A stretch of 64,000 nucleotides of DNA, from positions 146,264 through 210,263 of IMG/VR virus record IMGVR_UViG_3300038361_000164, one strand, 5' to 3'. Of the stretch, positions 11,352 through 64,000 are shown in pieces. Positions within the stretch are counted from its first letter, which is position 1. Each line of letters starts with the position of its first letter. The position numbers and the translations under genes are program-made. Under the pieces are notes generated by a model that saw only the letters and a program-made list of their open reading frames with translations, did not search any database and was not told where the DNA came from.

Positions 11352-11379
11352 TTGTTTGTTGGTTGTTTGTTATTGAAAT

Positions 11380-12100
11380 ACGGCTTAGATGACTGGGGTC
11401 ACCAGTCACCTAAGGAGCGATGAAACGGGGTAGGAATTGCGCCGCGATAAACAGTTGAGTTAATTAAATTCATCTGGTAGCTACATTTACCTCTAGTTTT
11501 GCCCATCTCAATTCTAAAAATCTGTCCTGGTAGTTAATTCTACTGATTTATTCACCCAATTTCAGGGATGGTCAAGACGATAACGCCTTGGCTGGTGGTT
11601 CAGCTAATCTATACGCCCTTTAGGACGGTCAGGAAGTGTGCTTACAGTCTTCAAGCGCTGTAAGTTTATTTTTATGTGATCGTCGGGGTGTTCTTGAAGA
11701 GAACAACACTTGCCTCCCACATAATTAGTTGCCCGTCTCTGGAAAGCGGGCTAGTTATATCTCCAAGATTAGTCCAGAACCATCTTGGCGCATTGTAATG
11801 CTACTGAACCAATTGTTGCATTTGTATTGTGTTTGCGTTTCTTCGGAATTTTGTTACTCTCGCCCTGAACCTGCCATTCATCTAATTGATGACTTAACAG
11901 GGGAGCGCATAACGATGTTCCAAACTCCTGGCCTAGAGTACCTCATTTTCAGCTTATGATATAAGACTCGTCAATTGTGCACAAAAGACAAGGGTTAACC
12001 TTATAACGTTGCTTTATAGAGTTTTTGTATGATTCGCAGCATACTACGAAGCGTGAGCTGCATATTAATGAATTTCTTGGGAAAGAAACACTTACACAAA
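11380..12100 (-). ncRNA. Candidate large structured non-coding RNA
   Basis: No credible ORF, higher GC than flanks, many hairpins (e.g. 11384-11414, 11641-11664, 11731-11751, 11763-11788); lies downstream of the promoter motif at 12234. Confidence 0.45.
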
Positions 12101-12102
12101 TT

Positions 12103-12181
12103 TGGGCTCCAAGTAGGGACGAACCTACACATATCTAGAGTACGCAGCTCGACGTGTCTAACACGTCGGAAGCATTGGAGC
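12103..12181 (-). tRNA. Aberrant tRNA-like element with CUA anticodon loop
   Basis: GCTCCAA/TTGGAGC acceptor, enlarged D hairpin, GCGTA-CTCTAGA-TATGT anticodon arm, no variable loop, GTAGG-TTCGTC-CCTAC T arm, 3' CCA. Confidence 0.5.
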
Positions 12182-12370
12182 ATTGAAATGTTGGGGTATA
12201 TTTATGAAATACACGCTAAGGTGTTATTCACTATTCTTATACCCAATTTCCTGAGTATTACAGGGTTCCATCTGATTTGCAACGTATCCTGCGGTAATAG
12301 ATAATATAATTACTAGGATCATGTGACCTATAAATCTACACGTAGCATCTTTCATATCAATCCTTTCTAA

Positions 12371-18866: not shown

Positions 18867-18932
18867 GGTAAAAAAAATAAATAGCAATTAAGTGCTAGTT
18901 AAGCACTATATCAGTACTCAACTAGCACTTAC

Positions 18933-19289
18933 TTACCGATTTAATCTCCAGTTCTGGAATTTCTCCCACAACCATTGTGCTCCCAATACTATAGAAGCTG
19001 CCAACATCACTGTTAGCATGAACCCAACTACCGTTGTTTCCATAATGATCTCCAATTAAGTATAGGAAGCGCTATTACAGCGCTCCCTATTAGTGACTGA
19101 GTGTTAGTCAGATGTGTTTGCTGCTTTCTTAGCCTTACGAGCTTCATTCATCTCAACACCTTTATTCCAGGTGTATGTGCCAACTCTTTTAAGACCTTTA
19201 CCAACCCAATAACCACCAGCAAGAATTCCTGCGGTTAGTAGATTGCTTCCAACTGCTTTACCATCGACTGAACCAAAAATATTCTTCAT
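18933..19289 (-). CDS. Two small single-TM proteins (18933-19043, 36 aa, not in track; 19104-19289)
   Basis: METTVVGFMLTVMLAASIVLGAQWLWEKFQNWRLNR and MKNIFGS...; GGAG RBSs; promoter motif at 19358. Confidence 0.6.
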
Positions 19290-19753
19290 GTGTATCTCCT
19301 ATTAAGGTTATGTGTATCAGTGCACGGCACGCCTTTGTGCTATACTACTGTACATCATTCTTATACCCTAAAATAGACGTAAAATAGTGGTAATGTCAGG
19401 TTAAAGCTGACCTTGGCACTATGAAAGGTACTTGTTTTAAACACGATCTTAAGTCATTGGGTCCTACTTCGACCCCCCACGGCGACCCTACCTCTCCGGC
19501 TGGTGTTTTGTATATATTATATTTTTTTTATTATTTTTTTTGAGCCCTATAGGGAACTTTTCTAGTATCGGTACGTTATAGAAGTATAGTTAAATAAATT
19601 TTATCATTATTTATTTGGTTAGTTGTTATTAAAAAAATCCTCTTATTTTTCTAGGCACTTTCACTGGTGCCTAGTTTTTTTTAACCTAAAAAAATAATTA
19701 ACCTAGAGAAAAGCGGTCGACCACCGCAATTCTCCTTTCTCACCGATTCAAAT

Positions 19754-19924
19754 CTAGTCTTCCCAAACTCCGTCCATATCGATGTCTAAAACGTTTTCAC
19801 ATTCACATCCATCTTCCGGGCAATCACATTCTTCATAATTGTCATCACAAGTAGGACAGTCACATCCTTCACATTCACAATTTTCTTCACTTTCATAACA
19901 TTCAAAACATTCCTTGTAACTCAT
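19754..19924 (-). CDS. 56-aa acidic Cys-rich (metallothionein-like) peptide
   Basis: MSYKECFECYESEENCECEGCDCPTCDDNYEECDCPEDGCECENVLDIDMDGVWED; 11 Cys; AAGGA RBS. Confidence 0.6.
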   Translation of the reverse strand: MSYKECFECYESEENCECEGCDCPTCDDNYEECDCPEDGCECENVLDIDMDGVWED

Positions 19925-19947
19925 ACTTCTTCCTTTCTTTCTTTCTT

Positions 19948-24529: not shown

Positions 24530-27500
24530 TTACTCCTTTCTTTTACCGTAAAATTCTTCTTCCATGTCGGTACCAACTTCTGACCAAGCCCCAAAAGTTT
24601 CATACCATTCTGGGTAACTGGCTTTCCTGTTACCTAACATATTCATGTTAACAACAAAGTGCCCTAAATCATCCAATATTTTTTCGAAAAAGGATTCAAC
24701 GCTTAATAAAGTTTGTTCTTCATCAATTGCTTGATCGGTTAATACTGGTTTTTTACTCATTTCCCTGTTCTCCTTTGTAGACTCAATACTTTTAGTTTTT
24801 TTAATACACTTATCACAATAGTAACGAATTCCGGCAGAAGTCTCAGCACGGTTCAAGTACTTATGTTCATTGGGTTTACCCCAGTTCTTGTCCTCACCAG
24901 CCACACCATAACAACTATCACACAGAACTTCAAATGTTTTTATCTCTCTATATGTCATCTAGCCTCTCCTTTGCTTCTTGCTCTGTACTACATAAAGTTT
25001 CATAACAACTTTGCAAAGCACGAATTACGTGAGGTATCTCAACTTTGTCGATCATGACTAGGTGAATTTCTTTATCCTCATCCAATTCTTCTATCTCTAC
25101 CGCCTCGTCTATGGTTCTGATAGTTATGTTTGCACCTAGTTCACCATACCAGAAGGTAAACTTCTCATCTCTATGATATTTTTCCATTATCTACCTCGAA
25201 ACTCAGGTGTGTGAACCATACGAGTATCTGATGGGAAGACTTTATAATAATCTCCATCAACATAAGCAGACTGACATGTGCCACCTAGGGTTTTTTTATT
25301 CCACATAGCGTCGGCGTCTTCTTTTGTTAAACCATCCTCAATATCTATCCAACCGTCGAACATATCATATAATCTCAGTACAAAGGTCTCACCTTTATTC
25401 ACTTCATTTACTCCATCCACTTCGTCCGCTTCATTTATTTTTTCATAGTTGTGAGAGACTATTATATTAGCAATTTCATCGAGTAAAGCAGCTTTTTCCG
25501 CATCGCTTACCTTTTTCGGCCGGTATAGTGTACCGCCCGTCCTCAAGTCATTTTTTAATGAAAAGTTCTTACACATCGTCTGTATTTAACTTCGCAACTT
25601 TATCAGTAAAATCATCGACTGCGGTATCTGCTACTTGTTTTGCGTAATTATTTAAACGTGCCGGCGGTTCCAGCGGTCCAGTATCTTGTGGATTTGAAAG
25701 AATCACTGCTTGATACGTCTCTCTCCAAACTTCTAATAAGTCTCGTTCTTGTATTTCCATTTTATTCCTTTTAATTTACTAATTTTTTTCGATGCTTTCT
25801 TACTAACAAAGTCTTTTTCCATATCTCATTTCCTTTTTATGAAGTTAAAAAAAAGCCCCCCACAATGAAGGGGAGCTTTTCTAATTTACCATAAATTGTC
25901 TCTGCTTCGAAACCATCTACAACTGCTAATACAATTAACAGATTGCAAACAGCGTTTCAGTTCACATTGATACCAGTAGCATTTTTTACATGGCTTTTCG
26001 GCATATCCAGCCCATAAAATACCACCAGCAACAAGACAGCATCCAACTACAAAAGTAACAACTATCATGTTTTTTTACTCCTTCTCGTTCTCCATTTGTG
26101 AAACCATATCCACCCGTGATAGGCGAAGAAAACTATCCATACAATGTATACAACGGTTGCTATCATTTTATTTCTTCCACCAGATCTGAACAGCAGTTTC
26201 CCACTCTTCCATGACATCTTCCATGTCCTTACCATGCCAGATCCATATGCCGAGACCGACTAATGCCAGTACAACTGTGCCAAGACCTATTACTACTAGA
26301 ATAAGCCATAGTATTGAATAGGCTATCTTGACAACAAAGAGTACAAACCAGCCAATCAACAAGAGTAACAATCCAATAACTATTCTTCCCGCCAAAGGCG
26401 CTTCATATAATGTATTAAACATTTTCATTCCTTTCTTTTTAATTAAGTGTTATCTACTATTCTTATACCAAATTACAGAGATTTGAACTTGTTTATACTA
26501 TCGAAGATCCCGTTACCAAATTTTTCGAAGCCATCGCTTCTAACAAAACTTGGTCTGTGTTTTCTAAAACATTTCCAAATATTTTTACCGGTTTTTTCGG
26601 CATCAGCTAGATCGATACATAGTTTAAATTCTTTTAGTTCCTGCAATGAAAACGGCCAAACACCGCCACCCCACTTTATGTTATTCTGAAGTGCGTAGTT
26701 GAGTGCTAATAAGTTTGTCATTTCGCTATCCTTCATTACTTCTCCTTACTTATAGTCAGTACCATTGACTCGATTGATTTCCGCCAACAACTCTTTGCGA
26801 GTCGGGTGCGTCACATTGAACCAGTGATTTTCCGGGTTCTGTATCAAGGTACTCAAAGCATCGTTAAAATATCTAAAGGATTCAACTACTATCATTGTCT
26901 TTTTGTTATACACTATGTAGTAATGCCTAAGATCATCTGCCTCATACTGTTTCTTCCGTATAGCAGCTCGTATCTTTTTCAACTTCGCTTCAACATGTTC
27001 GAACGCCCTGTGAAAAGCATAAGGATCGCTGCGCCCATGACGCACTTTAAAAATACTTTCACCAGAGTGCATTGCAGCATCAATTGCCGCTTCGTCATCC
27101 ACATTATCTTCGGTTATCCCAAAAATACGTTCTAACGTATTACGCTGCCAATCCAATTCCTCAAAATACTTTTCAAAAGCATCTTTAGAAGGACTCAGCA
27201 CCGCTCCAACCCTTCCAGCCGCATAAGCTTTTTGGACTTCCTCTTTCATACTCTTAAGTATCAAAGTGGTCATCTCATGTAACTCATCAACTGGAAAAGC
27301 GTTTGCAAGCATAGTTACAAAGCGTGTTCTTTCTTCTTGATTCATGATTATTCTCTCATTTCTTCATCGCTAAATACTAGATTAGCGTGAATTTCACGTC
27401 CATCAGATAAAACAAATACTTCTTTAACCAAAGAGAAATCTACAATTGTAAGAGTCTCGTTATCAATTACATAAGTAGTTCCTAGCTTTGTTTCAAATTT

Positions 27501-28705: not shown

Positions 28706-31223
28706 TTACAACACTATAACTCTATATGATTTGACATAAAAAGCCAAGGTTCGGCTATTATACATCTCCCCACGGGTTAAAGTATATGCCGGGTTTCGGT
28801 CTGTTGATTTGTAAGCCCGTAGATAATATACCTCTTGCTCTGCAACAGGAGATTTTATCATTAACCTCTCTCCTTTCAACCACAAGTTTTCAGCGGTTGG
28901 AGGAAGCGTTGTTTGGTAAGATACTGTATCCGTCTCACCAAATCGATCATGTATTTCAACAAATACAATTTGTGACGGCATTTCCATTACCAACATTTCT
29001 TCTACTGACATAGGCACTGGAAACGCGAGTTCTATTACAATAAATGCCGCCCATAAGCCGGCACATATCATAAGTGTTTTTTTCCACGAAATGGGTTTAT
29101 CCATTTTATTCCTTTCTGTTAATAAGCTCTTTTTATTTGATTGCTGTTAATTACAAAGTGTAATTTAGTAATTTCATCATAAAGCATCATATCTCTTTTT
29201 ACAAGAAAAATTCCTCCAAACTCACCAACACCTTCAAAGCTGTGAAAGCGTCCAATTTCTGCAATTAAGTATTTTACTCTAACAGGCATTTCATCAAACT
29301 TTTGTTTAACTTCGCCTTTTCGTGATTTATTTATCTCAAAATACCCGTCCCACCCAATAACATTAATCCAATCACCAACCTTAAGAGGGGGCTCATCACC
29401 TATAATAGTATATATGTTGAAATCTACTTGTATTTCTGCTGGAAGATGTCTAAAAAGTAATCCACGTACCTTTACAGTATCTACAATAGGGGCACCCTCT
29501 TCAAGCATGTGTAAAGTAAAATCTCGCGCTCCCTCTTCCCAACTATCAAATTGACAGATCGGAAGTGAAGAGTACGTGTGACTAATACTTATTCCAGTTG
29601 GACTGTGAGTTGCTGTAACTTTAAACATAGTAATTGCCTCCTGTATTTAACCAGTCCATACTCAAATCCCTCTTTACCCAGATAAAAGCACCTGTGAGTA
29701 CAGCAGCACTACTAGCTGCCCAAATCAGTACTAATATCGCGTCTACTGTAGAATTAATGACTATTAAACCAAACACTAACCAAAAGACTAACCATGTCAG
29801 AGCAACATACAATCCCGTAAAGAATATGATTCCATAAATCTTACTTATCCCTAATACTTTAACCAATCCTACCCAACTACTACTTACATTGAGCACACTT
29901 ATGCCCACAATAAGAATAGTGAATACAACAGGACATATTGCTAGTGTCAAAAACCAAGGACCAGAATATCCAAGCAAGTAGCAAAGAATTGGAGCGAAAA
30001 TGCTACTCACATACAGAACAGTTTTTGTTACTAAAGATGAGAACTGTAATACAGTCATATTCATTAGTTATTTCCTTTCTGATGATTTCTCTTTTTATTT
30101 TTTTTATCACCTTCTTTAGGACCAGTTTTCGGGGTCTGCACATTAGCAGCCGCAGGTGGAGTAAATGATGTTTTAGTAATTTTTCCACCTTCTTCTCTAG
30201 TTACAAAGTAACCACGTCTTCGTGCTTTACTAACTTGACGTCCAGTTATTCCAAACTTCTCACCAAGTTCTTTATTAGTTTCTCTTGCGCTCATACTCTA
30301 TCTCCTTTTTTGTGAATTAAATTGAAGGAGTCGAACCTTCATATACCAGTATTCTTATACCAAATTACAGGAGATTCTTAAGGTAAAAAGAAGAACCAAA
30401 GTCCTTCCTTTTTTAGACATAACCCACCCAATGGACGGGGATCGACTTCAATCAAACTGTCTATCTAGTTTACGTCAGAAGGTCCATTCTCATCTTCATA
30501 ATCAAGGATCATTTCCATGACTAGTTTACCGTAGTAAGGATATCCTCCCTCTCCAGTATGCATAAAACCTTCACTATTTCTAGCATCAATAGCATATGAA
30601 AGAGTGCAGGCGTTATTGTGTTCTTGTGACAGAATTCCAATAATTTTGGATTTAGGAAACTCTGTTTGAAGTTCAAGAATATGTTCCTCTTTTATAGGAC
30701 CTTGGCTTCCTATATGTTCTCCGATAATAACATAATCCGGTTCAAAAGGTCTATCTGGATTATTTATATAGTTATTGTAATGCCATTCCATTACTGTGTT
30801 TTTTAACTTCTCAGGACGTAGAACATCTTTTCGAGGCATATCTGTTTTTGGAGACATGTGTTTTAGGACTGTTTCTTTTTTAAAGAATAACAGCACCGGT
30901 CGCAGCTCATCGGCTTTACTAAGCCACTCTTCGTTGCTGCGTCCGTGTCTATATGCTTTGTTTATCACATATGCAAATTTTAAACATCTTGCCAACCACC
31001 TATTTACATATAGACCTTTGCCATCACACTGTATTAACTTGTCACCCATAGTTATCATTAACTCCCTAATGACTTCATCAGTAAGCATTCCGACAACATG
31101 AGCAAACCCGTAATACGGAAACATCTTTTCGAGTTGTTCGTATTTTTCGATATTAGCATTGCTTAAGCGTCCTCGTCTGGTTCCTGTATGTGCTTCTTGT
31201 AAGTATGTAATATTTGTATTCAT
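28706..31223 (-). CDS. Hypothetical genes, including a multi-TM protein (29621-30064), a small basic HTH-like protein (30064-30294) and a 252-aa protein (30465-31223)
   Basis: ORF track; hydrophobicity; TNKELGEKFGITGRQVSK HTH-like pattern. Confidence 0.55.
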
Positions 31224-31329
31224 TCTTTATCTTCCTTTCTTTTTTTTTGATAATTAAGATTTGATTACATACTATTCTTATACCAATTTTAAGCTAAAAA
31301 AAGAGAAGGGGGTCCGTCTCTTTTTCCTT

Positions 31330-32500
31330 ACTACTAAAAATAGAAAAGAATTTACATTTAGTTGAGGTTTACACGAAAGATAGACTCGGCACTTCGTAGA
31401 AGGGCTGAACAATCTTTCTTGTTTACGTCAAGTATATGCAAATTCAATTGCCATTCTGTGAATTCTCTATACCTAGAGAGTTCTTGTTTCGTTCAGATAT
31501 TCCCATACCTGCGTATGCGTAGCACATGCGTTTAAACGAATCTAGTAAAATTAAATGTTTGGGCTTTTTACTACAAAGCGGCAAGAGATGTTTAAACCTT
31601 GGTTTACTCATCTTGATTTGCCAAGTAATTAGTTGGAACCCAGGCACGTAACGTACCTGTAGACATAGTCTAGTAAAAAGTTTGGATAGTTATTTATCAC
31701 TAAAGAAGTACGGTTTCGAATAGTATACCCTACGTATTATGGTTTGGCTGGATACTTGCGGGTTAAGACGAGCTTATTGTGGGACCGCAGTCCCATTCAA
31801 GCGCTGTCTTATCCGGCGCTAAGTAGTCGGTCGAAACATAATACACTTGGTATACTAAGTGGAACCTGGTTCTCTCGAACATACTCTATGTTCTTTGTTT
31901 AAGTCTGTTAGTTTACAGACTTCCATATGCGAAACGCATCTGTTAAACGGTCTAATAAATAAGTTGGTTTTCCTTCACTACTAAAGGTCGAAGAAGCTTC
32001 TCTTATTCGCGGCTATTTACATTTCATCCTTCTGAGAGTACTTCACCGTAGAGACACTTCGTAAAAGTTAATCCTTGAATAACTTTGCGGAGGGTTTCCT
32101 GAAGTAGGATCAGAAGGGTACAATGAAACGGAAATAGGGGTGAATTCGTTGGGACCAGAGGAGATTCGAGATCTTTGGATGGAGACCATATCGAATAAAG
32201 GAATAATCGTTCGGACATGCTGTTCGACCGTTTACCGATGTTGGAGTTCCGGCATTAAGATTTAAGGCTGGAACGACCTAACCCGGTAAATGGTTCGGGA
32301 CAGTGTCTGAATGTTATACCATATTTTGATATGCGGAAATAAGTAAACAGTAGCCTTACGCGGTTGTTTACGGTTTCCTTGTCTGGAGTTATTAACGAAA
32401 AAGAAATAAGTCAATAACGATCAAATGCGAAACGCATCTGTGAGAATTCTAGTAAAGGTGAGTCCGTAGGTGAAACGGACTCTAAAAGAAAGGAATATAA
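31330..32500. ncRNA. Candidate large structured non-coding RNA (strand uncertain)
   Basis: ~1.2 kb with no credible ORF in either code; long helices (32211-32310, 32460-32482); repeated ATGCGAAACGCATCTGT at 31927 and 32425. Confidence 0.45.
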
Positions 32501-32544
32501 CATGAGGTCATATTACATAATTCTTATACCCTATAATATTTTTT

Positions 32545-32965
32545 TAGTTGGTAAGCTCGAAGGTGAATCGAGCTATTTGTTACCAAACCCATTATAAGGA
32601 GAGCTGTAAACTAAGCAATACCCAAATTCTCGATATTACTTCTCTGTTACAGGGATGAATGAAAGGTTGTCTGTCACGATCCGCTAAGATCATAACTATA
32701 GGATTCCATTAACTGGAGCCTGCCCATTATCCCGGGCCAGTTACTTTATTTGTGGAAAGTATAAACCTGTGGGTTGAATCTCACCTATGAGCAGTTAATT
32801 GACAAATACTCGATTCAGAACGACAAGCGTTCAAAGCAGAAGCGTAGAGCAGGAAGATAGAGAGATGGACTCTACGCCATGGATATTCGTCCGAAGACAA
32901 ATATCGTAAATCAATCTCGGAGGGCTAAGTATGTGTGGCCACACAATATAAGCAATCTCCGAGTA
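32545..32965 (-). ncRNA. Candidate structured non-coding RNA downstream of a tRNA-like element
   Basis: Successive hairpins, including a C(UUCG)G tetraloop stem with a G-U pair on the minus strand at 32882-32905. Confidence 0.45.
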
Positions 32966-32974
32966 TTAAAGACA

Positions 32975-33065
32975 CTGTCGTACCGAGACTCGAACTCGGG
33001 AAGGACTCAAAGTCCCACTGTCCGCTTAATTTGTACTCCAGGGCGATCAGGACCTGGCCACGCAG
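32975..33065 (-). tRNA. Aberrant tRNA-Gln(UUG)-like element
   Basis: Canonical T arm CCGAG-TTCGAGT-CTCGG; GGGA-CTTTGAG-TCCT anticodon arm; bulged acceptor CTGCGTG/TACGACAG; enlarged D region. Confidence 0.5.
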
Positions 33066-33172
33066 TTCTTTAATAAGTTTAAATCTTTAGTAATCTCTTA
33101 CTCATCATTCTTATACCAATTTTTGATAAAATAATCCTTTACACTTACACGGGAGTATTATATATTAACAAT

Positions 33173-33472
33173 ATGGACAAATCTACATATGTTTTCGAAA
33201 AGCTGGCGAATAAACTAAACAATAAACCACAATGAGTTAAGGACCTTGTTCCTGGAGCTGCATCTGGAGTGGTCACTAGTTTAATGTTTCACCCATTAGA
33301 TACGTTACAAGTGTTGAGACAAACAGAGAAAAAAATGCCTAACGTAACTTTAAAAAGATTGTATAAAGGGGTAGGATTAAAATTGTTAAAGCAAGTACCT
33401 ACTATGGCAGTAGGCTACGGTGTGTACGGTGCTACAAAACGATATGTGGAAAATAAGTCTTCGGTTACTTAA
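33173..33472 (+). CDS. Leader-bearing protein consisting of one mitochondrial-carrier (Solcar)-like repeat (TGA=Trp at 33233)
   Basis: MDKSTYVFEKLA...(W)VKDLVPGAASGVVTSLMFHPLDTLQVLRQ...LYKGVGLKLLKQVPTMAVGYGVYGATK. Confidence 0.7.
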
Positions 33473-33632
33473 TATATAATACAACAAAAAAGTTTTAAAA
33501 AAACATTATCAATAAAACTCTTTGCGTGTATACATAGATTGTGTATATTAAAGAACACAAGTAGAAAAATTATACCTGAGCTGCTTCAGGGGTTTTAAGC
33601 AGTAATTAAACTAAATAATGGAGATCATTATA

Positions 33633-34106
33633 ATGGACAAAGCAGAATTAATAATGGAAAAGATCGCCGCAGGTGGACATTTTAGAGCAGCTGGCAGCTC
33701 AATATACAAAGGCGTAAGAAGTGCAGCAGGCACAGCTAGAGGTCAAGTATCCAAAGGTTGGGCAGGCATCAAAGGTGGAGCTACTGTAGGTAAAGCCAAA
33801 GCAATGGAATACGCTGGATCAGCAAAAGCAAAAGCAGGAAAAGCTTACAGCAAAGGCAAAGATAAAGCAACAGCGGCTTATGAAAAAGCTAAAACTAAAG
33901 TTAAGGGAACAAAAGCTGCAAAGGATATTGGTGTAATGAAAGCACATAATAAAACAAGTAAATCCTATAAAGGTGCAAGAAAACGTACTGCAATTCGTGC
34001 AGGAGTTGTTGGAGCGGGAGCTATTGCGTCCGGTGGAGCTGCATATGCATTATCTAAGAAAGCAGAACTTGCATTAGAAAAATTAGCTGAAGCATATCTT
34101 TCATAA
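33633..34106 (+). CDS. Basic Ala/Lys-rich putative internal virion protein with MDKAELIMEKIA leader
   Basis: Leader motif at the N-terminus and repeated at the C-terminus (KAELALEKLA). Confidence 0.65.
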   Translation: MDKAELIMEKIAAGGHFRAAGSSIYKGVRSAAGTARGQVSKGWAGIKGGATVGKAKAMEYAGSAKAKAGKAYSKGKDKATAAYEKAKTKVKGTKAAKDIGVMKAHNKTSKSYKGARKRTAIRAGVVGAGAIASGGAAYALSKKAELALEKLAEAYLS

Positions 34107-34123
34107 ATAAATAAATCAATAGT

Positions 34124-35443
34124 ATGGCAATCGGAATTCCGGATATCAAAATGTTTCGGGCTTTTCCGACTGTAAACAGTCCTCAAAAGGGAACTTTTAA
34201 TATACAACTACATGAAGCGGATCGTGCAGGAAGACATTACGACATTCGTATTGTTCTTCCTGGATCTTCTCATGCGTATTCCTGAGCTGCCAGAAAACTC
34301 CCAACATCTGGACAGAAGGTAATGGCCATCGAACAACCAACTCACACGGAAAGCTATGTGGGTTGGTCTGGTACTATATCAAAAGGATATGGGAAAGGGA
34401 CAGTGCGCTCAATTGTTAAAGAGCCAATCGAAGTCCTAGAAGCTACAGTAAATAAAGTTGTTTTTAACATATACACAGGAAACTCGGCAACTCGCTATCT
34501 ACTAAAAAGAACTGGTGCGAAAGAATGGTTATGATATAACTATACTCTTACCACAGATAATACCGCAATACCTACCAAAAAACCTTCCTATAAAGAAATA
34601 GAGTTCTCAGCCCTTACAACTCTAAATAAAGAAGAAGTACATTCTCCTAAATTAGACGGAGCACATAATATAATTCGATTGCGACCAGAAAAACGGATAG
34701 ATATTTATTCTTATAGAAAAAGTAAAAAAGGAAAAGAGAGAATAGATCATACATATAAAACAGATTTGTATAAAATAAGATCGCCAAAAGAATTTGGTGA
34801 CTCGGTTATTAGAGGTGAATTATATGTTCCCGGAAAAACTTCTACGGAAACTGGATCTATTTTAAACTCGAACGTATGAAAAGCTAGAAAGAAACAACAA
34901 GAATCAAACAACTCTTTAGATATTAGGATTTATAATATTGACACTTACAAAGGAAAAGATGTAAGCAAGAAACCTTATAGAGAAAAACTTTTAATGTTAC
35001 AAGAGATTAGTCGTCGAATTCCTCAACTTAAAATGATGGAATTAGCGCGTACACAAGGCGAAAAGTTAAAACTAATAGACCAGATCAAACACAAAAAACA
35101 TAAGGAAACGGAGGAGGGAATTGTTGTATTTAATCTCAATAACCCTACACCTGTCAAAGCTAAAATAGCATCAGACTATGATGTGCTTATTACAGGAACA
35201 TTTCCAGCAAAGCCTGGAACTAAATATCACGGAAACGCTATCGGCGGTTTTTTGGGACGACCAGAGAACAGTAACATTATTATTAGAATAGGTAGCGGCT
35301 TAACAGATCAGATTAGAAGAAGTGCTTATACTAATCCTGAAAAATACGCAGGACAGTGAGCAAAAGTAAAAGCTAACTCTAAATTAAAGAGTGGCAAATA
35401 CCGTCATCCAAGATTTATTGAATGACGTTATGAAAAATTTTAA
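34124..35443 (+). CDS. LigD 3'-phosphoesterase domain fused to ATP-dependent DNA ligase (5 in-frame TGA)
   Basis: QLHEADRAGRHYDIRI...S(W)AARKLP...YGKGTV (PE domain); SPKLDG, EEGIV, IGSGLT, RHPRFIE(W)R (ligase and OB fold). Confidence 0.85.
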
Positions 35444-46391: not shown

Positions 46392-47791
46392 ATGTATACA
46401 TCTCTAGATCTTGAAACCTTTGGCAAACAAATATCTGAGCAGCATTTTCAGACAAAGGAATCATTGACTTCACTTTTATCTAAAGTAGCTTCTTCTCACG
46501 AACTTACCTCGCAACAAGTTCATCGAGTAGCGGAATCCGCTAATATAGATACTTATCTAAATATGATGAAAACAGCCGAAGAAAAATATATTAAATTTGA
46601 AGTTGCAGATCCAATTGCAGTAGCTCACGGCCAAACACAGGTAGTGAAAACTGCAAGTGTTGTTACTAATTATGATTATAACACCTCTTTGGAAGATCAT
46701 TTGCATGATCTTATTCCTTCGGCAGAAAAAACAGCTGAAGAAATAACTATACCAGAACCTACTAATACAGAAATGCAGAAAGAAGCTGGCCTTAAACTAG
46801 GAGCTGTTATTAGAAAAGAAAATCATTTATTAGACGATCAACTTATTATTGCAAGCGAATTTGACAGTATAGAAGGGTTAGTAAAACAAGCACTGTTGGG
46901 CGGAACCTCTTTTAGCGATATTGCTCATGTACTTAAAGTAGCAGCTCCTATTTCCAATATGGGACTAATCACACACATAAAAGCAGATCTAGAAAAAAAC
47001 ATTCCACACCATAACTTTGAAGTTGCTTCATGCGACAGAGACCTTAGAACAGATTCTAAATTATATAAAAAAGCTGCGGCTTTTGATAAATCTGTAGATA
47101 CCCTTATTACTAAGGTAGCTGAGTATACAGAAATCTTACAAGACTATGTGACTTATGTACAAGATAAAGAATTACCAATTTTACATAAAGAAGCTGGTGT
47201 TTTGAAGAAGGTTAAAAATGTAGGTGAATTTGTAGGAAAACACAAAGTAATGTCTACTATGGCTGTGTTTGTTCCGGTCTCTTATAAAGCGGGAAAAGAA
47301 AAAGGCAAAAGAGATATGTCTAAAAATATTAAAGTTATAAAGGGGAACAAATAATGTCTACAATACCTAAATTTACACAATCCAAAATGTTCAGTCGAAC
47401 CGTGAGCTCATTAGCAATGGTAGGACTTGCTTTTTTTGCAGATGCAGTTAGAGACGCATTACATGCTACTGGACAAAAAAGAAAATCTAGAAAATTCTTT
47501 GAACAAATGTTGGAACACCACCCTCAATTGCAAAAAGAAAAACCAGAGATAGTGGCTAAGTATTGGGCATCTTTAAATCATTTTGCACCATATATGGCTC
47601 AAGAGCCAATGGCTGCTGGTGCATATATTAGACAGTCTATTCAACGAGGTTATCAAGAAGAATTTGGTGGCCCACCTCCTGATACATTTTCCACTTTAAC
47701 AGATATAAATAAAAAACTTAGTGATCAAAAGAAAAAAGGACCTTCCGAATTAGTACAGTATGCCTTAAAGGGTTCTGGATTAATAAACTAG
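46392..47791 (+). CDS. Two head-morphogenesis proteins (46392-47354, 47354-47791)
   Basis: Between terL and the protease; many K-x-A motifs in the first. Confidence 0.55.
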
Positions 47792-47803
47792 GTATTCAAA
47801 TAA

Positions 47804-49534
47804 GTGACCGATATTGGATTTAATAAAACTGTAGATTTTCTCTATGGAGACAACCAATCTGAAGTATTTCAGCCGTTGACTGCTAATATTGGATTAGAAA
47901 AAACCGCAGGATACTCTGAAGAACTGCAACAATATGTAAATTCTCTTAAACCAGCTTCTGGAAAAACATATGCGTTAGTAAACGCATTATCAGCTGGTGA
48001 ATACTTTGGTGAAAATCGAAACAGAGACTACTTTCCAGAAAAAGCTTTACAACAATATCACAAAACATTCGAAGCTTTAGGACATATATATGAGCATCAT
48101 GTAAATAAAGATCCTAGAAGAGCTCTTGGTAAAGTTTCATTTTCACATTATAATAATATGATGAAAAGAGTTGAACTTATATTAGAACTTATCGAATCCA
48201 AAGCACAACATATAATTAAAAGATTACACGCAGGCGAGTTGCCGGCGGTTAGTATGGGCTGCAGAGTTCCTTTTGATGTGTGTTCCATATGCGGAAATAA
48301 GGCGAAAACACGAGCACAGTATTGTCATCATTTAACAAAAAAGATGGGACATGTGTATCCAAATGGGCAAAAAGTATATGCCATTAATACCATGCCTAAA
48401 TTTTTTGATATTAGTATCGTAACCATTCCTGCAGATAAAACAGCTAGTTTCATTTCAGAATTACTAACGAGCTCAGGATCTAGACGTTCAATACGGCTTA
48501 ATGATTTCAATCAAAGAGACAGTGCTGCCGTACGTTTACAAAAAGTAGCCGAACTTTCCAGCGTTGCAGATATAAAAAAGAAAATTGATGTAGAAGTTAC
48601 AGCAATTGATAAAGATCCTAAAAACTTAATTTTGGAATCTCAAAAACGTCTTTCAAAAGATCAGCTTGAGAAGTTATCAAAATTCCCCCTTAGTGCTACC
48701 TTATCCACAATGCTGGGATTGAGAATTGTTCCAACTAAAGAAGATTTTCAAAAATTAGCACTATATGCTTCTGGACATAAAAAATTAGCAATACAATTGG
48801 AAGAACAAAATATTGTATTTGACTCCGACGATGAGGCAAAAGATCTAACAGATGTCGGACTTAATAATTATAATAAAAAAATAGCAGAAGTGCTAAAAGA
48901 AGACATACCAAACATGTCTTTAACAAAACCCTTGATTGTTAAACGAGGAATTGCTTATATTCAAAAAACGGCCGTAGATAATTCTACTCCTTATACTACC
49001 GGACAAACAAAAGACAGAAGTTTGATTGGTAAAATGTTTTTTGGACAAAAAGAAGAACCAACTTTAACACCACATCGTAATCCCATAGTACCTCTTGGAA
49101 TTCTTGGAGCTCTGTATAAGGGATATGTGAAAATATTTAACAATAGTACAACTGGATTTAGGAAATTTTTACGAATCCATCCGTGGCTATTACCAGTGCT
49201 TGTGGGTGCCGGAACGGCAACATCCCTTGGAGCACAACAACTGGTTTTTAATAAAACAGCCGGCTGGGTAGACCGCTTTGTGGCTTCATCTCTATTAACT
49301 GTTCCTGCTTCATATTTTGCTGCAGGAGTACAAGAAGATAAAGCAATTAAAGGAAAACCAATCAGTCGTTTTGAAAATTTTGTTAGAAAACACCCATTAA
49401 TAATGGGAGTGACTTCAGCTGGAGTTATTGGAAAAGGAACTCATAAAGTTAAAAAACTATTTAAAACAGCTGAATTGATATCGAGAATGAGTCAAGAAAA
49501 CCTTGACATCATTTATAAAGAACTTATATATTAA
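47804..49534 (+). CDS. Prohead maturation protease with long C-terminal extension
   Basis: NRNRDYF, EHHVNKD, VSMGCRVPFDVCSICG, FFDISIVTIPAD (HK97/assemblin-like His and Ser motifs with Zn-finger insert). Confidence 0.75.
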   Translation: MTDIGFNKTVDFLYGDNQSEVFQPLTANIGLEKTAGYSEELQQYVNSLKPASGKTYALVNALSAGEYFGENRNRDYFPEKALQQYHKTFEALGHIYEHHVNKDPRRALGKVSFSHYNNMMKRVELILELIESKAQHIIKRLHAGELPAVSMGCRVPFDVCSICGNKAKTRAQYCHHLTKKMGHVYPNGQKVYAINTMPKFFDISIVTIPADKTASFISELLTSSGSRRSIRLNDFNQRDSAAVRLQKVAELSSVADIKKKIDVEVTAIDKDPKNLILESQKRLSKDQLEKLSKFPLSATLSTMLGLRIVPTKEDFQKLALYASGHKKLAIQLEEQNIVFDSDDEAKDLTDVGLNNYNKKIAEVLKEDIPNMSLTKPLIVKRGIAYIQKTAVDNSTPYTTGQTKDRSLIGKMFFGQKEEPTLTPHRNPIVPLGILGALYKGYVKIFNNSTTGFRKFLRIHPWLLPVLVGAGTATSLGAQQLVFNKTAGWVDRFVASSLLTVPASYFAAGVQEDKAIKGKPISRFENFVRKHPLIMGVTSAGVIGKGTHKVKKLFKTAELISRMSQENLDIIYKELIY

Positions 49535-53419: not shown

Positions 53420-54213
53420 TGTTAGTCTTAACTGAATTTTATGTCTCTACTTTTGCTAGAGACACTGCAACAGTTACATGGTCTTTTGAAAGCACTAATG
53501 AAACCATTAGTGGATATACTTTATCTTTATACAAATCTGAAGCCCCAAGCACTGTTCTAACTGATTATGATATAATTGCGTCAGGCATTACTGCTGATAA
53601 TTATACTTATACAGATGTATCTCTTTCAGGGTTATATTCAGATAACAGAAATTGGTATTACTTAGCATCCGTAATAAATACTTTAACAGGGGAAACAAAC
53701 ACACAACCAACCACTCCAGCGTATTTAAAAATAAATACCACTTCAACGAAGTTTAGTGAGATATTAAGAAGAAAAAATTTAGTACTCCAAAGATTTAGTG
53801 CTAGAGAAACTATTTATTTTGTAAAAAGACGCACATGGGGAACATTTTGTACAACTTGTTGGAATGCGACATTACAGCGAGTTTCAGAAGAAAATTGTGC
53901 GACTTGTTTTGGTACTGGATATGTGGGAGGTTATTTTTCACCCGTTTCAATATATGGAATGATAAATTCTGCTCCAAAATATAATCAAATAACAATGTTT
54001 GGACAATTTATGCCAAGCGATGCGATTATGTACATGACAAATTTTCCTGTAGTAACTCCACAAGATGTTATTGTAGATGCCATTAACCGTCGCTGATTAG
54101 TGAACGAAGTTAGACATTTAGAATTTAAAGGAAGAATTATAGAACAACAAGCACACTTAAGTAAACTTAGTATAGATGACATAACTTACACTATAAGCGG
54201 GTTAGGAAGCTAA
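53419..54213 (+). CDS. Neck/head-closure protein with FN3-like N-terminus and Cys motif (TGA=Trp at 54094)
   Basis: CTTCW...CATCFGTGYVGGY; frame continues RR(W)LVNEV to TAA at 54211. Confidence 0.6.
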
Positions 54214-61865: not shown

Positions 61866-64000
61866 GTGCCTAAAATTCCATTTAAACAGTTAGAGGGTGT
61901 TCTTAGTGAAGCTCAATTAGCGGCTGCTTACGCTGCAATAGATGTTAGCGCCTCTACAACTGCGCCCGTAAGTCCCTCAGACTGACAAGTTTGGCAAGAT
62001 ACCACGACCGATCCCCCACAATTAAAAACTTGAGATCCAACTTCAGAAACATGAAAAGTCGTAGCCGCAGGAGGCACATCCGGCTCATCAGGCTCATCTG
62101 GCTCTGATGGTACGTCTGGTGTAGCAGGTACCTCCGGTTCATCAGGCTCATCTGGTTCTGACGGTACATCCGGTTCATCAGGTTCATCAGGCTCATCCGG
62201 TTCTGACGGCACATCTGGCTCATCAGGCTCATCTGGTTCGTCTGGAAATCATGGAGCAAGCCTTCTATATAGTTATGATGGTAGTTCTCATGCTGCTAAT
62301 CCTGGATTAGGGGATATCAGGTTTAATAATGCCGATGTTACTTTAGCAACTGCTATGTACATTAACGATTCCGATATTAACTCGACAAATACTGCTGCAT
62401 GGGTAGCCACTTTCGATGACTCTACTAACGGAGTACAAGGTCACCTTGTTTTCCACGAAGCTTACGCGACAGAAAACTGGGTTATCTTCGAAGTAGGATC
62501 GGTAACTCCAGGAATAAACTACTCAACAGTAGTTCTTACTCACGTAGATTCTTCCGCTTCAGCTCCATTCGGAAACAACGATCTTATAAACGGTAATTTC
62601 TTTCGTGCAGGAGACATGGGAACATCCGGCTCATCAGGCTCATCTGGCTCATCTGGTACATCCGGATCATCAGGCTCATCTGGTACATCCGGATCATCTG
62701 GTTCATCTGGTTCTGATGGAACTTCAGGTTCATCTGGATCATCAGGCTCATCTGGTACATCCGGTTCATCAGGATCATCTGGTACATCCGGCAATTCAGG
62801 TACATCAGGTTCTTCTGGATCTTCTGGTACATCTGGTTCATCGGGATCATCCGGCACATCTGGTAATTCAGGCACATCTGGATCTTCCGGCTCATCTGGC
62901 ACATCTGGTACATCAGGCTCATCTGGATCATCCGGCACCTCCGGGTCATCTGGATCCTCAGGTACGTCGGGAGCCATAGGAGTAGCTGGTACATCTGGTT
63001 CATCTGGTTCATCTGGAATAGATGGTACATCGGGTACATCTGGAGCTACAGGAGTAGCAGGTACGTCTGGCTCATCTGGCTCATCTGGCACATCTGGTAA
63101 TTCAGGTACATCAGGTTCTTCTGGATCTTCTGGATCTTCAGGTACATCAGGTTCTTCTGGATCTTCTGGTACATCTGGCTCATCAGGATCATCGGGCACT
63201 TCAGGGGTGGCTGGTACATCTGGCTCATCAGGATCATCAGGTACTTCAGGAGTCGCGGGAGCGGCCGGCACATCTGGCTCATCAGGATCATCGGGATCAT
63301 CTGGTTCTGATGGAACATCAGGCTCATCAGGCTCATCTGGGTCTTCTGGCACATCTGGCTCATCAGGATCCTCAGGCACTTCAGGAGCGGCAGGCACATC
63401 TGGTTCATCCGGCTCATCGGGCTCTGATGGCACATCTGGCTCATCAGGATCATCAGGTACGTCTGGTATATCTGGCACATCTGGTTCATCAGGCTCATCT
63501 GGTTCTGACGGCACATCCGGTTCATCAGGCTCATCCGGTTCTGACGGCACATCCGGCTCATCAGGCTCATCTGGTTCGTCTGGAAATCACGGAGCAAGCC
63601 TTCTTTACAGTTTCGATACAGCCGTAGGTGTAGGAGATCCAGGAGCGGGAGATATTAGATTTAACAGTGCAAATGTTACTATCGCAACTGTGATGTACAT
63701 CAGCAATTCTGATATTAATTCGGTAGATGTTTCGGCATGAATAACTACTTTCGATGACTCTACTAACGGAGTACAAGGTCACCTTGTTTTCCACGAAGCT
63801 TACGCGACAGAAAACTGGGTTATCTTCGAAGTAGGCACAGTAACACCTGCAGCCGGATATTTAGCTGTGACTATTACTCACGTAGATTCTTCTGGAACTG
63901 CCCCATTTGGAAACGATGATCTTATAAACGGTAACTTTTTCCGAGCAGGAGACGCAGGAACTGACGGCACCTCTGGGTCATCAGGATCTTCAGGTTCTGA
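61866..64000 (+). CDS. Fibre-like virion protein with (G-S/T-S)n collagen-like repeats and a duplicated globular domain (runs off the window)
   Basis: GGAGG RBS plus GTG 61866; Gly every third residue; domain repeated at ~62245-62620 and ~63585-63960. Confidence 0.75.
62070..63585 (+). repeat. Coding tandem 9-bp repeats (GSS/GTS/GSD triplets)
   Basis: GGNTCNTCN / GGNACNTCN units in two tracts (~62070-62245 and ~62619-63585). Confidence 0.9.

What the first reader, a model, noticed from the sequence alone, without database searches (positions are those of the whole stretch)
32530..33117. Second unit with the same architecture: promoter, tRNA-Gln-like element, ~430-nt structured RNA
Seen: promoter motif at 33108, then a 91-nt element with a canonical T arm, UUG anticodon loop, 2-nt variable region, enlarged D region and bulged acceptor. 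Serial hairpins follow, including a UUCG tetraloop. The same distortions (large D region, minimal variable loop) occur in the 12103-12181 element despite different sequence. Inference: a recurrent functional RNA design rather than random tRNA decay.
Basis: partly seen in the sequence, partly recalled or inferred. Interest (0 to 1): 0.68.

Follow-up and report, generated by a model that had tools for sequence, protein, structure and literature searches.

The report
Phage noncoding RNA with tRNA-like module
A giant marine phage carries a roughly 570-base, non-coding, tightly folded RNA unit that opens with a tRNA-shaped module and holds a 139-base core also kept in a related phage. It looks like a real RNA gene of unknown function, neither a working tRNA nor plain tRNA debris.

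Summary
A recurrent promoter motif (33117-33107, minus strand) is followed by a junction with a canonical T arm, then four stable hairpins, one with a UUCG loop. The unit has no long ORF under table 11, TAG=Q or TGA=W.

It is not a tRNA. ARAGORN and Rfam find nothing even at very loose thresholds. The "acceptor" is the top of a 17-bp leader/trailer stalk. U8 and the G18/G19 pair are missing from the D loop, and the "UUG anticodon" hairpin folds better as 7 pairs with a 3-nt loop.

The best-supported functional part is a 139-nt core, 32805-32667. It recurs at the syntenic spot in the one closer relative found, with the same length and compensatory changes. That relative has a 63-aa ORF where this phage has the tRNA-like module, so the promoter/tRNA-like/RNA architecture is not conserved.

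The unit opens a 1.95-kb ORF-free RNA island that also holds a new repeated structured element ("E"). Elsewhere the phage carries a YrlA-like array and about 13 extra T-arm elements. A more distant relative drives a GOLLD RNA from the same promoter motif.

Function is inferred, not shown. Interest is moderate to high.

The parts
33107..33117 (-). Promoter motif (extended -10 type, GGTATAAGAAT). Transcription probably starts near 33104-33100.
   Evidence: 18 copies in the genome, all on the minus strand, against about 0.4 expected. The same motif occurs 20 times on one strand in relative G001 and upstream of the homologous locus in L089. Activity was not tested.
32964..33075 (-). tRNA-like module: a four-way junction on a 17-bp stalk. 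Stalk strands 33075-33059 and 32982-32964; first hairpin 33057-33038; unpaired linker 33037-33019; second hairpin 33018-33000 with UUG at its tip; T arm 32999-32983.
   Evidence: Fold of the whole unit. Canonical T arm. No ARAGORN or Rfam tRNA call.
32983..32999 (-). Canonical T arm: 5-bp stem, 7-nt UUCGAGU loop, G53-C61.
   Evidence: 33 such arms in the genome against 0.5 expected. 13 lie outside tRNA genes called by ARAGORN, all on the minus strand.
32818..32963 (-). Four stable hairpins: 32963-32916 (compound), 32905-32882 (10 bp, UUCG loop), 32878-32841 (10 bp, 18-nt loop), 32832-32818.
   Evidence: For 32835-32955, z is -3.5 on the minus strand and -1.25 on the plus strand (own shuffles).
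32667..32805 (-). Conserved 139-nt core ('C-motif'): a closing helix, a 5' region with conserved unpaired blocks, and three hairpins.
   Evidence: nhmmer of the unit against relative L089 gives E 2.4e-8. The homolog L089:561-423 is also 139 nt. Helices sit at matching positions, with compensatory changes in the closing helix, the middle hairpin and nearly every pair of the last hairpin. Stops occur in the reading frames.
32540..32666 (-). Tail with a 14-bp interrupted hairpin (about 32586-32549). It can instead pair over 16 bp with 32817-32802. No U-tract terminator before the next promoter.
   Evidence: z is -3.1 on the minus strand and -0.3 on the plus strand.
32520..32530 (-). Next copy of the promoter motif. 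It starts the following non-coding unit.
31224..32519 (-). Rest of the RNA island. It holds a partial E motif (32462-32421), two long imperfect hairpins centred near 32260 and 32080, and E elements at 31975-31694, 31691-31612 (short form) and 31568-31328. A hairpin plus U tract near 31330-31295 is followed by promoter 31284.
   Evidence: nhmmer and covariance-model searches. Covariation counts. z ranges from -3.2 to -7.7.

Best explanation
The unit is a non-coding transcript of a TGA=W-recoded marine jumbo phage, read from the minus strand off a phage-specific promoter of the extended -10 type. It is a composite of three parts: a tRNA-derived junction (canonical T arm) on a 17-bp leader/trailer stalk, four stable hairpins, and a conserved 139-nt multi-helix core.

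The core is the part under selection and is most likely the functional RNA. The tRNA-like head cannot decode. I infer that it serves as an accessory handle. A T-arm junction on a double-stranded stalk is the kind of shape that host tRNA-processing and tRNA-modifying enzymes or a double-strand RNase recognise. It could therefore define or protect the 5' side of the downstream RNA within a longer precursor, since no terminator is seen before about 31300.

Shown: non-coding status, recurrent promoter motif, non-random T arm, strand-biased stability, and conservation with covariation of the core. Inferred: transcription, processing, and any role for the tRNA-like head.
For: - No long ORF under table 11, TAG=Q or TGA=W. 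The unit lies in the largest ORF-free stretch of the genome.
- Promoter motif: 18 copies on one strand in this phage and 20 in G001.
- T arm: 33 observed against 0.5 expected.
- 17-bp stalk, of which 9 pairs are perfect.
- Fold z -4.25 on the minus strand against -2.0 on the plus strand.
- Core conserved in L089 at the same place relative to the divergent plus-strand genes, with the same 139-nt length and compensatory pairs.
- The phage reuses T-arm modules widely. A YrlA-like array scores 42-43 bits, and a T-arm hairpin sits about 20 nt after promoter 30361.
- Relative G001 places a GOLLD RNA (165 bits) behind the same promoter motif.
- tRNAs sometimes sit in the GOLLD linker (bioRxiv 10.1101/2024.12.08.627333).
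Against: - No expression data. All 24 runs that hold the sequence are DNA runs.
- The one relative with this locus lacks the tRNA-like head, so the head is dispensable for the core.
- The head plus stalk is not thermodynamically exceptional (z about -0.6). No covariation could be measured for it, because the four runs laid showed no variants and no homologs were found.
- Support for the core rests on two sequences only.
- No CCA and no single-stranded 3' end, which makes classical RNase P/CCA processing less likely.
Confidence: 0.45

Rival explanations
1. The tRNA-like element is a decaying relic of a phage tRNA gene, perhaps a class II tRNA such as Leu(UAA). It has no role and merely lies next to an unrelated conserved RNA.
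For: - It fails every tRNA detector.
- U8 and the D-loop GG are missing.
- It is absent from relative L089.
- Its best similarity is to the phage's own tRNA-Leu(UAA).
- It is not unusually stable.
Against: - The T arm is intact in stem and loop, although the rest has diverged beyond recognition.
- The closing helix is extended by 9 perfect leader/trailer pairs that no tRNA gene needs.
- About 13 such elements persist in the genome, all on the transcribed strand.
Confidence: 0.25
2. The whole unit, or the whole 1.95-kb island, is one large ornate RNA of a new class, a functional analogue of GOLLD/ROOL. The tRNA-like module would be an integral domain, as tRNAs are in some GOLLD linkers.
For: - Relative G001 has a true GOLLD behind the same promoter motif, whereas this phage has none.
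- The full-length fold predicts a 16-bp long-range helix, 32817-32802 with 32580-32564, that encloses the core.
- There is no terminator inside the unit.
- There is a literature precedent.
Against: - There is no Rfam match to GOLLD or ROOL.
- Only 139 of about 570 nt are conserved in L089, where the 5' half is a protein-coding gene.
- The long-range helix is not seen in L089.
Confidence: 0.15
3. The head on its bulged stalk is a Y-RNA-like decoy that binds host Ro60/Rsr or tRNA enzymes. It would be a second type alongside the phage's YrlA-like array.
For: - The phage has a YrlA-like array.
- D. radiodurans Yrn1 is modelled with its T-arm module oriented differently from YrlA with respect to the RNA ends (PMC4201824).
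- The stalk carries single-base bulges.
Against: - There is no YrlA or other Rfam hit on the element.
- The phage has no TROVE gene and the host is unknown.
- The element is embedded in a longer RNA instead of being about 100 nt.
- It is absent in L089.
Confidence: 0.07
4. The conserved segment acts in cis, either as a leader or 3'-UTR regulator of neighbouring genes, or at the DNA level in the divergent control region or replication origin.
For: - In L089 the core lies about 50 nt upstream of a 98-aa ORF and just after a 63-aa ORF.
- The island sits at the switch between leftward and rightward genes and at the minimum of cumulative GC skew.
Against: - In this phage no ORF follows the core for 1.4 kb.
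- G+C here is above the genome average, and no iterons were found.
- Stability is biased to the minus strand, and a G-U pair fits the minus strand only.
Confidence: 0.08

Closest known systems
GOLLD RNA (Rfam RF02032), and ROOL
   Same: These are large, elaborately folded phage RNAs of unknown function, found near tRNA genes. Some GOLLD members carry a tRNA in the linker between their domains. A relative of this phage has a GOLLD right behind the same promoter motif.
   Different: There is no sequence or structure match. Here only a 139-nt core is conserved. The embedded element is not a functional-looking tRNA.
Bacterial and phage Y RNAs (YrlA, Rfam RF02553; D. radiodurans Yrn1)
   Same: These are non-coding RNAs that carry a tRNA-mimicking module with a true T arm (PMC4201824). 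The same phage holds a YrlA-like array.
   Different: In YrlA the acceptor-like stem is closed by a loop and a D arm is present. Here the acceptor-like helix is open and formed by leader and trailer, there is no recognisable D arm, there is no model hit, and the phage has no Ro60 gene.
tRNA-like elements joined to downstream RNAs: MALAT1-mascRNA, and the tRNA-like small non-coding RNAs of murine gammaherpesvirus 68. Papers listed; mechanisms from my own knowledge.
   Same: A tRNA-shaped module is joined to further structured RNA, and tRNA-processing enzymes set the RNA ends. MALAT1 also uses a leader-trailer interaction (title of PMC8457004).
   Different: Those are eukaryotic or animal-virus systems that use RNase P and RNase Z. 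No processing has been shown here, and the module is far from the tRNA consensus.
Ordinary phage tRNA genes and tRNA pseudogenes
   Same: Canonical T arm, four-arm layout, and a phage with 26 tRNAs and a tmRNA.
   Different: It fails tRNA detectors. It has no U8 or G18/G19, an aberrant first arm, a 19-nt unpaired insert, no free 3' end, and a 17-bp stalk.

Membership tests
tRNA (Rfam RF00005 / ARAGORN) | Recognised by a tRNA covariance model or by ARAGORN | tested here: not met
   ARAGORN at default finds none in the window. Relaxed to 80% it finds none; at 60% it gives only '???' calls with 2-nt anticodons. Rfam gives no tRNA hit at E<=10 on 3 kb, on 64 kb or on 136 nt. Other odd tRNAs of this phage score 24-43 bits.
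tRNA (Rfam RF00005 / ARAGORN) | T arm: 5-bp stem, G53-C61, loop U54 U55 C56 R57 A58 | tested here: met
   32999-32983.
tRNA (Rfam RF00005 / ARAGORN) | 7-bp acceptor stem with a free discriminator/CCA end | tested here: not met
   The helix has a bulged A. It continues through a G bulge into 9 further leader/trailer pairs, and there is no CCA.
tRNA (Rfam RF00005 / ARAGORN) | U8, and a D arm with G18 G19 in its loop | tested here: not met
   Read directly: position 8 is G, and the 10-nt loop of the first hairpin has no GG.
tRNA (Rfam RF00005 / ARAGORN) | 5-bp anticodon stem with a 7-nt loop (U33, purine 37) | tested here: inconclusive
   A 7-nt loop with UUG is possible only on a 4-bp stem. The minimum-energy fold gives 7 pairs and a 3-nt loop. 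The hairpin aligns best with the variable arm of the phage tRNA-Leu(UAA).
YrlA / Y RNA-like (RF02553) | T arm and D arm flanking a closed acceptor-like stem-loop; match to the family model | tested here: not met
   No hit at E<=10. The acceptor-like helix is open. True YrlA-like units exist elsewhere in the genome.
YrlA / Y RNA-like (RF02553) | Ro60/Rsr (TROVE) partner | tested here: not met
   The phage has no TROVE domain, and the control genomes rang. The host is unknown, so a host partner cannot be tested.
GOLLD (RF02032) | Match to the conserved 3' domain model | tested here: not met
   No match in the window or the whole genome at E<=10. The same tools find GOLLD in relative G001 at 165 bits.
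ROOL (RF03087) | Match to the family model | tested here: inconclusive
   No match. The control genomes did not ring either.
Group I intron (RF00028) | Match to the catalytic core model at this locus | tested here: not met
   The hits lie only at genome 7714-7912, 6385-6612 and 142359-142602. There are none in 31000-34000.
Bacterial extended -10 promoter | TGn plus a TATAAT-like hexamer, recurrent upstream of genes on the transcribed strand | tested here: met
   The motif is strand-exclusive, with 18 copies, and mostly intergenic. It is shared with G001 and L089. Promoter activity itself cannot be tested here.

The most novel reading that the evidence does not exclude
The unit and its neighbours are members of one or more undescribed classes of large structured phage RNAs that incorporate tRNA-derived modules. 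These include unit 1 at 12243-11352 and the E elements. In this lineage they would fill the niche that GOLLD fills in the related phage G001, as part of a phage RNA arsenal aimed at host tRNA and RNA-surveillance machinery. That arsenal also includes the YrlA-like array, the tmRNA and 26 tRNAs.
Probability: 0.22. Interest if true: 0.8.

Novelty: new variant of a known kind. Interest (0 to 1): 0.58.

Why it matters
Large structured phage RNAs such as GOLLD and ROOL are few, have no known function, and were recently shown to form RNA-only cages. This phage offers several new candidates in one genome: a conserved 139-nt core, a five-copy E family with covariation, and T-arm modules used outside tRNAs. 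All are tied to one promoter type that drives a bona fide GOLLD in a relative. That gives a comparative handle on why phages link tRNA-like shapes to large RNAs. It also provides defined constructs for enzyme-cleavage, probing and cryo-EM tests.

Tried and rejected
- **Known RNA families.** Rfam gave nothing for the unit at the gathering threshold or at permissive thresholds.
- **Alternative genetic codes.** The genome does use TGA=W, but the unit stays ORF-free.
- **tRNA with an intron.** Rejected, because there is no group I match at the locus.
- **E-element membership of the unit's 5' end.** I suspected this by eye. nhmmer and a covariance model rejected it.
- **Paralogs in the genome.** None found.
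- **Homolog hunts:**
  - The phage database gave nothing in near or distant mode.
  - The flanking 252-aa protein has no relatives.
  - G001 shares only the promoter/terminator motif.
  - Exact-pattern scans for the core and for the tRNA-like element gave nothing or only chance matches. They covered viral, metagenome and genome contigs.
  - A scan for the E motif gave only chance matches.
- **Microdiversity from public runs.** There were no variants in the four runs laid, and the contigs are low-depth fragments.
- **Protein homology between the L089 63-aa ORF and the unit.** None found.
- **Technical.** One timing-out script was rerun.
- **Not run.** No complex prediction or structure prediction was run, because no protein claim is made.

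Full report
**Context**

The window is the last 64 kb of a 210,263-bp, 99%-complete virus record. The sequence occurs in many seawater DNA metagenomes, and none of the holding runs is RNA.

The phage carries 26 tRNA genes and a tmRNA, all on the minus strand at genome 104-131 kb. None lies in the window.

The genome reads TGA as tryptophan:
- The DNA ligase gene (34322-35443) has four in-frame TGAs. Three align with W and one with F in a relative.
- ORFs of at least 150 aa rise from 141 under table 11 to 187 under table 4.

**The observation**

The promoter motif GGTATAAGAAT lies at 33117-33107 on the minus strand. The core GGTATAAGAA occurs 18 times in the genome, always on the minus strand, against about 0.4 expected. 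It occurs 20 times on one strand of the related phage G001.

Folding the unit by reference gives these parts on the minus strand:

| Part | Coordinates | Notes |
|---|---|---|
| Stalk | 33075-33059 with 32982-32964 | 17 bp, two single-base bulges |
| First hairpin | 33057-33038 | enlarged first arm |
| Unpaired linker | 33037-33019 | 19 nt |
| Second hairpin | 33018-33000 | UUG at the tip |
| T arm | 32999-32983 | canonical |
| Hairpin | 32963-32916 | compound |
| Hairpin | 32905-32882 | 10 bp, UUCG loop |
| Hairpin | 32878-32841 | 10 bp, 18-nt loop |
| Hairpin | 32832-32818 | |

The unit folds at z -4.25 on the minus strand and -2.0 on the plus strand. It has no long ORF under table 11, TAG=Q or table 4, and every frame holds 6-9 stops. 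With its neighbours it forms the largest ORF-free stretch of the genome, 31224-33172 under table 4.

**Is the 5' element a tRNA?**

The T arm cannot be a chance match. The genome has 33 strict T arms against 0.5 in simulated genomes. Thirteen of them lie outside tRNA genes called by ARAGORN, all on the minus strand.

Everything else fails:
- ARAGORN finds nothing at default or at 80% stringency.
- Rfam gives no tRNA hit at E<=10 even when only 136 nt are searched. Other odd tRNAs of this phage score 24-43 bits.
- Position 8 is G, and the first loop has no GG.
- The "acceptor" runs on into nine perfect leader/trailer pairs and has no free 3' end.
- The "anticodon" hairpin prefers 7 pairs with a 3-nt loop.

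The tRNA-Gln label is not supported. The best local similarity is to the variable arm plus T arm of the phage's own tRNA-Leu(UAA), with score 42 against a shuffle maximum of 38. The head plus stalk alone is not unusually stable (z about -0.6).

**Conservation**

The only closer relative that keeps this locus is L089. Its helicase is 73% identical and its ligase 71%.

L089 matches the unit over unit positions 294-433 only (nhmmer E 2.4e-8). The matched core is 32805-32667 here and 561-423 in L089, and both are 139 nt long.

Both cores fold into a closing helix plus three hairpins at matching positions. Compensatory changes occur in the closing helix, in the middle hairpin and at nearly every pair of the last hairpin. 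One G-U pair fits the minus strand only.

The distance from the core to the first plus-strand gene is similar in the two phages, 361 nt here and 342 nt in L089. That gene is 48% identical between them.

L089 has no tRNA-like element. Between its promoter motif and the core lies a 63-aa ORF with a ribosome-binding site. So the core is conserved, and the three-part architecture is not.

No further homologs of the core or the head were found. The four public runs laid show no variants.

**Surroundings**

The unit opens an RNA island. Behind the next promoter copy (32530) come, in order:
- a partial E motif;
- two long imperfect hairpins;
- E elements at 31975-31694, 31691-31612 and 31568-31328;
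- a hairpin plus U tract, followed by promoter 31284.

E is a new repeated structured element. Two more copies lie in the tRNA region. A covariance model of its 5' domain finds five copies, and a marginal one in G001.

Covariation supports the E structure: 84% of cells are paired against 24-46% in slid controls, and six pairs show changes on both sides. The model does not match unit 2, so my early impression that the unit's 5' end is E-like is rejected.

The two extra E copies lie inside an array at genome 110.0-111.7 kb with eight bracketed units. Five of these hold a T arm, an acceptor closed by a loop, and a D arm. That is the YrlA layout (PMC4201824). Two score 42-43 bits on the YrlA model, below its cut-off of 69. 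The phage has no Ro60 gene.

Another T-arm hairpin sits about 20 nt after promoter 30361.

Unit 1 (12181-12103) folds into a four-arm cloverleaf. It has an 11-bp first arm, a 7-nt loop with CUA at the anticodon position, no variable loop and a short T loop. Relaxed ARAGORN reads it instead as a 70-nt Arg(GCG)-like call. Rfam finds nothing. It is followed by about 750 nt without a convincing ORF.

The more distant relative G001 has a true GOLLD RNA (165 bits) about 400 nt after a copy of the same promoter motif. This phage has none.

**Mechanism**

*Shown:*
- The region is non-coding.
- It sits behind a recurrent, lineage-conserved promoter motif.
- Its stability is biased to the minus strand.
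- Its core is conserved with covariation.
- It contains a genuine T-arm junction.

*Inferred:*
- The core is the functional RNA.
- The tRNA-derived head on its double-stranded stalk is an accessory handle. It would offer a recognition or protection site for tRNA enzymes or a double-strand RNase, setting the 5' side of the downstream RNA within a longer precursor. No terminator is seen before about 31300.

I give this reading 0.45. The rivals are:
- a functionless tRNA relic beside the core (0.25);
- one large ornate RNA of a new class (0.15);
- a cis or DNA-level element (0.08);
- a Y-RNA-like decoy (0.07).

**Comparison and novelty**

The closest known systems are GOLLD with tRNAs in its linker, YrlA-type tRNA mimics, and tRNA-like processing modules such as MALAT1-mascRNA (the mechanism is from my own knowledge).

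Membership in tRNA, YrlA, GOLLD and group I families was tested and not met. ROOL was inconclusive, because its controls did not ring.

I class the finding as a new variant of a known kind: a phage non-coding RNA that carries a tRNA-derived module.

**Limits**

- Only two sequences support the core.
- There is no RNA evidence.
- The host is unknown.
- The z-scores come from my own dinucleotide-preserving shuffles. Coding controls in that call ranged from +1.5 to -3.8, so they are indicative only.

Noticed in passing
window 34322-35443 (+) and 33173-33472 (+); whole genome: The phage reads TGA as tryptophan. The ligase has four in-frame TGAs, three aligned to W and one to F in relative L089. 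ORFs of at least 150 aa number 141 under table 11 and 187 under table 4. No convincing tRNA with a UCA anticodon was found; the only candidate, at genome 106498-106588, is a poor relaxed-threshold call.
   Followed up: partly
outside the window: G000:C1:110047-111680 (L012:7048-8681), minus strand: An array of eight units bracketed by two conserved motifs. Five units hold a T arm, a loop-closed acceptor and a D arm, which is the YrlA layout. Two score 42-43 bits on the YrlA model (cut-off 69). Two anomalous tRNAs flank the array. One unit has a 7-nt loop with UUA at the anticodon position. The phage has no Ro60 gene.
   Followed up: partly
window 31975-31694, 31691-31612, 31568-31328, partial 32462-32421 (minus); also L012:8386-8133 and 7740-7466: A new repeated structured element, 'E', of about 120-280 nt. 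It has a closing helix, a conserved 5' three-way junction and a variable middle. There are five model hits and covariation (six pairs with changes on both sides). It has no Rfam match. A marginal relative lies at G001 108006-108285, closed by a 10-bp helix.
   Followed up: partly
window 30319-30361 (minus): A canonical T-arm hairpin with no other tRNA parts lies about 20 nt after promoter copy 30361, in the 5' leader of a 76-aa ORF (30294-30064).
   Followed up: no
window 11352-12243 (minus): Unit 1: promoter 12243, then a cloverleaf-like element at 12181-12103 with CUA at the anticodon position and CCA-like bases after the acceptor, then about 750 nt with no convincing ORF under table 4. z is -2 to -3 on the minus strand. 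No homologs were sought in relatives.
   Followed up: partly
window 31990-32340: Two long imperfect hairpins (arms of about 35-70 nt) centred near 32260 and 32080. They are very stable on both strands, with z -4.1 and -6.8.
   Followed up: no
relative G001 (IMGVR_UViG_3300025867_000006): 47273-48117; 53842-54060; 63584-63768; 65351-65606: G001 carries a GOLLD RNA (165 bits) behind the shared promoter motif. It also has group I introns, two of which sit just upstream of orphan T arms (63807, 65657). That suggests tRNA genes split by introns.
   Followed up: partly
outside the window: genome 114646, 118597, 122543, 130614 (minus): Further non-canonical elements with a T arm and a 7-bp acceptor. 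One is 141 nt long with a normal D arm and an insert of about 65 nt. One is 94 nt long and followed by CCA.
   Followed up: no
window 33173-33472 (+): A 99-aa protein with one TGA codon matches a single mitochondrial-carrier repeat (Pfam Mito_carr, 39 bits, cut-off 22). A 48%-identical homolog lies in L089. This is unusual for a phage.
   Followed up: no
window 62355-63740 (+): A 461-aa collagen-triple-helix-repeat protein explains the jump in G+C to 0.49 at the end of the record.
   Followed up: yes
outside the window: genome 7714-7912, 6385-6612, 142359-142602 (minus): Group I intron matches of 58.7, 25.7 and 12.5 bits.
   Followed up: no
window 25577-26167 and 18867-19947: Two further ORF-free stretches under table 4, of 591 and 1081 nt. 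The second contains promoter copy 19367, and copy 26469 lies about 300 nt upstream of the first. There is a weak GcvB-like hit at 25847-26011 (27.5 bits, E 0.04), probably chance.
   Followed up: no
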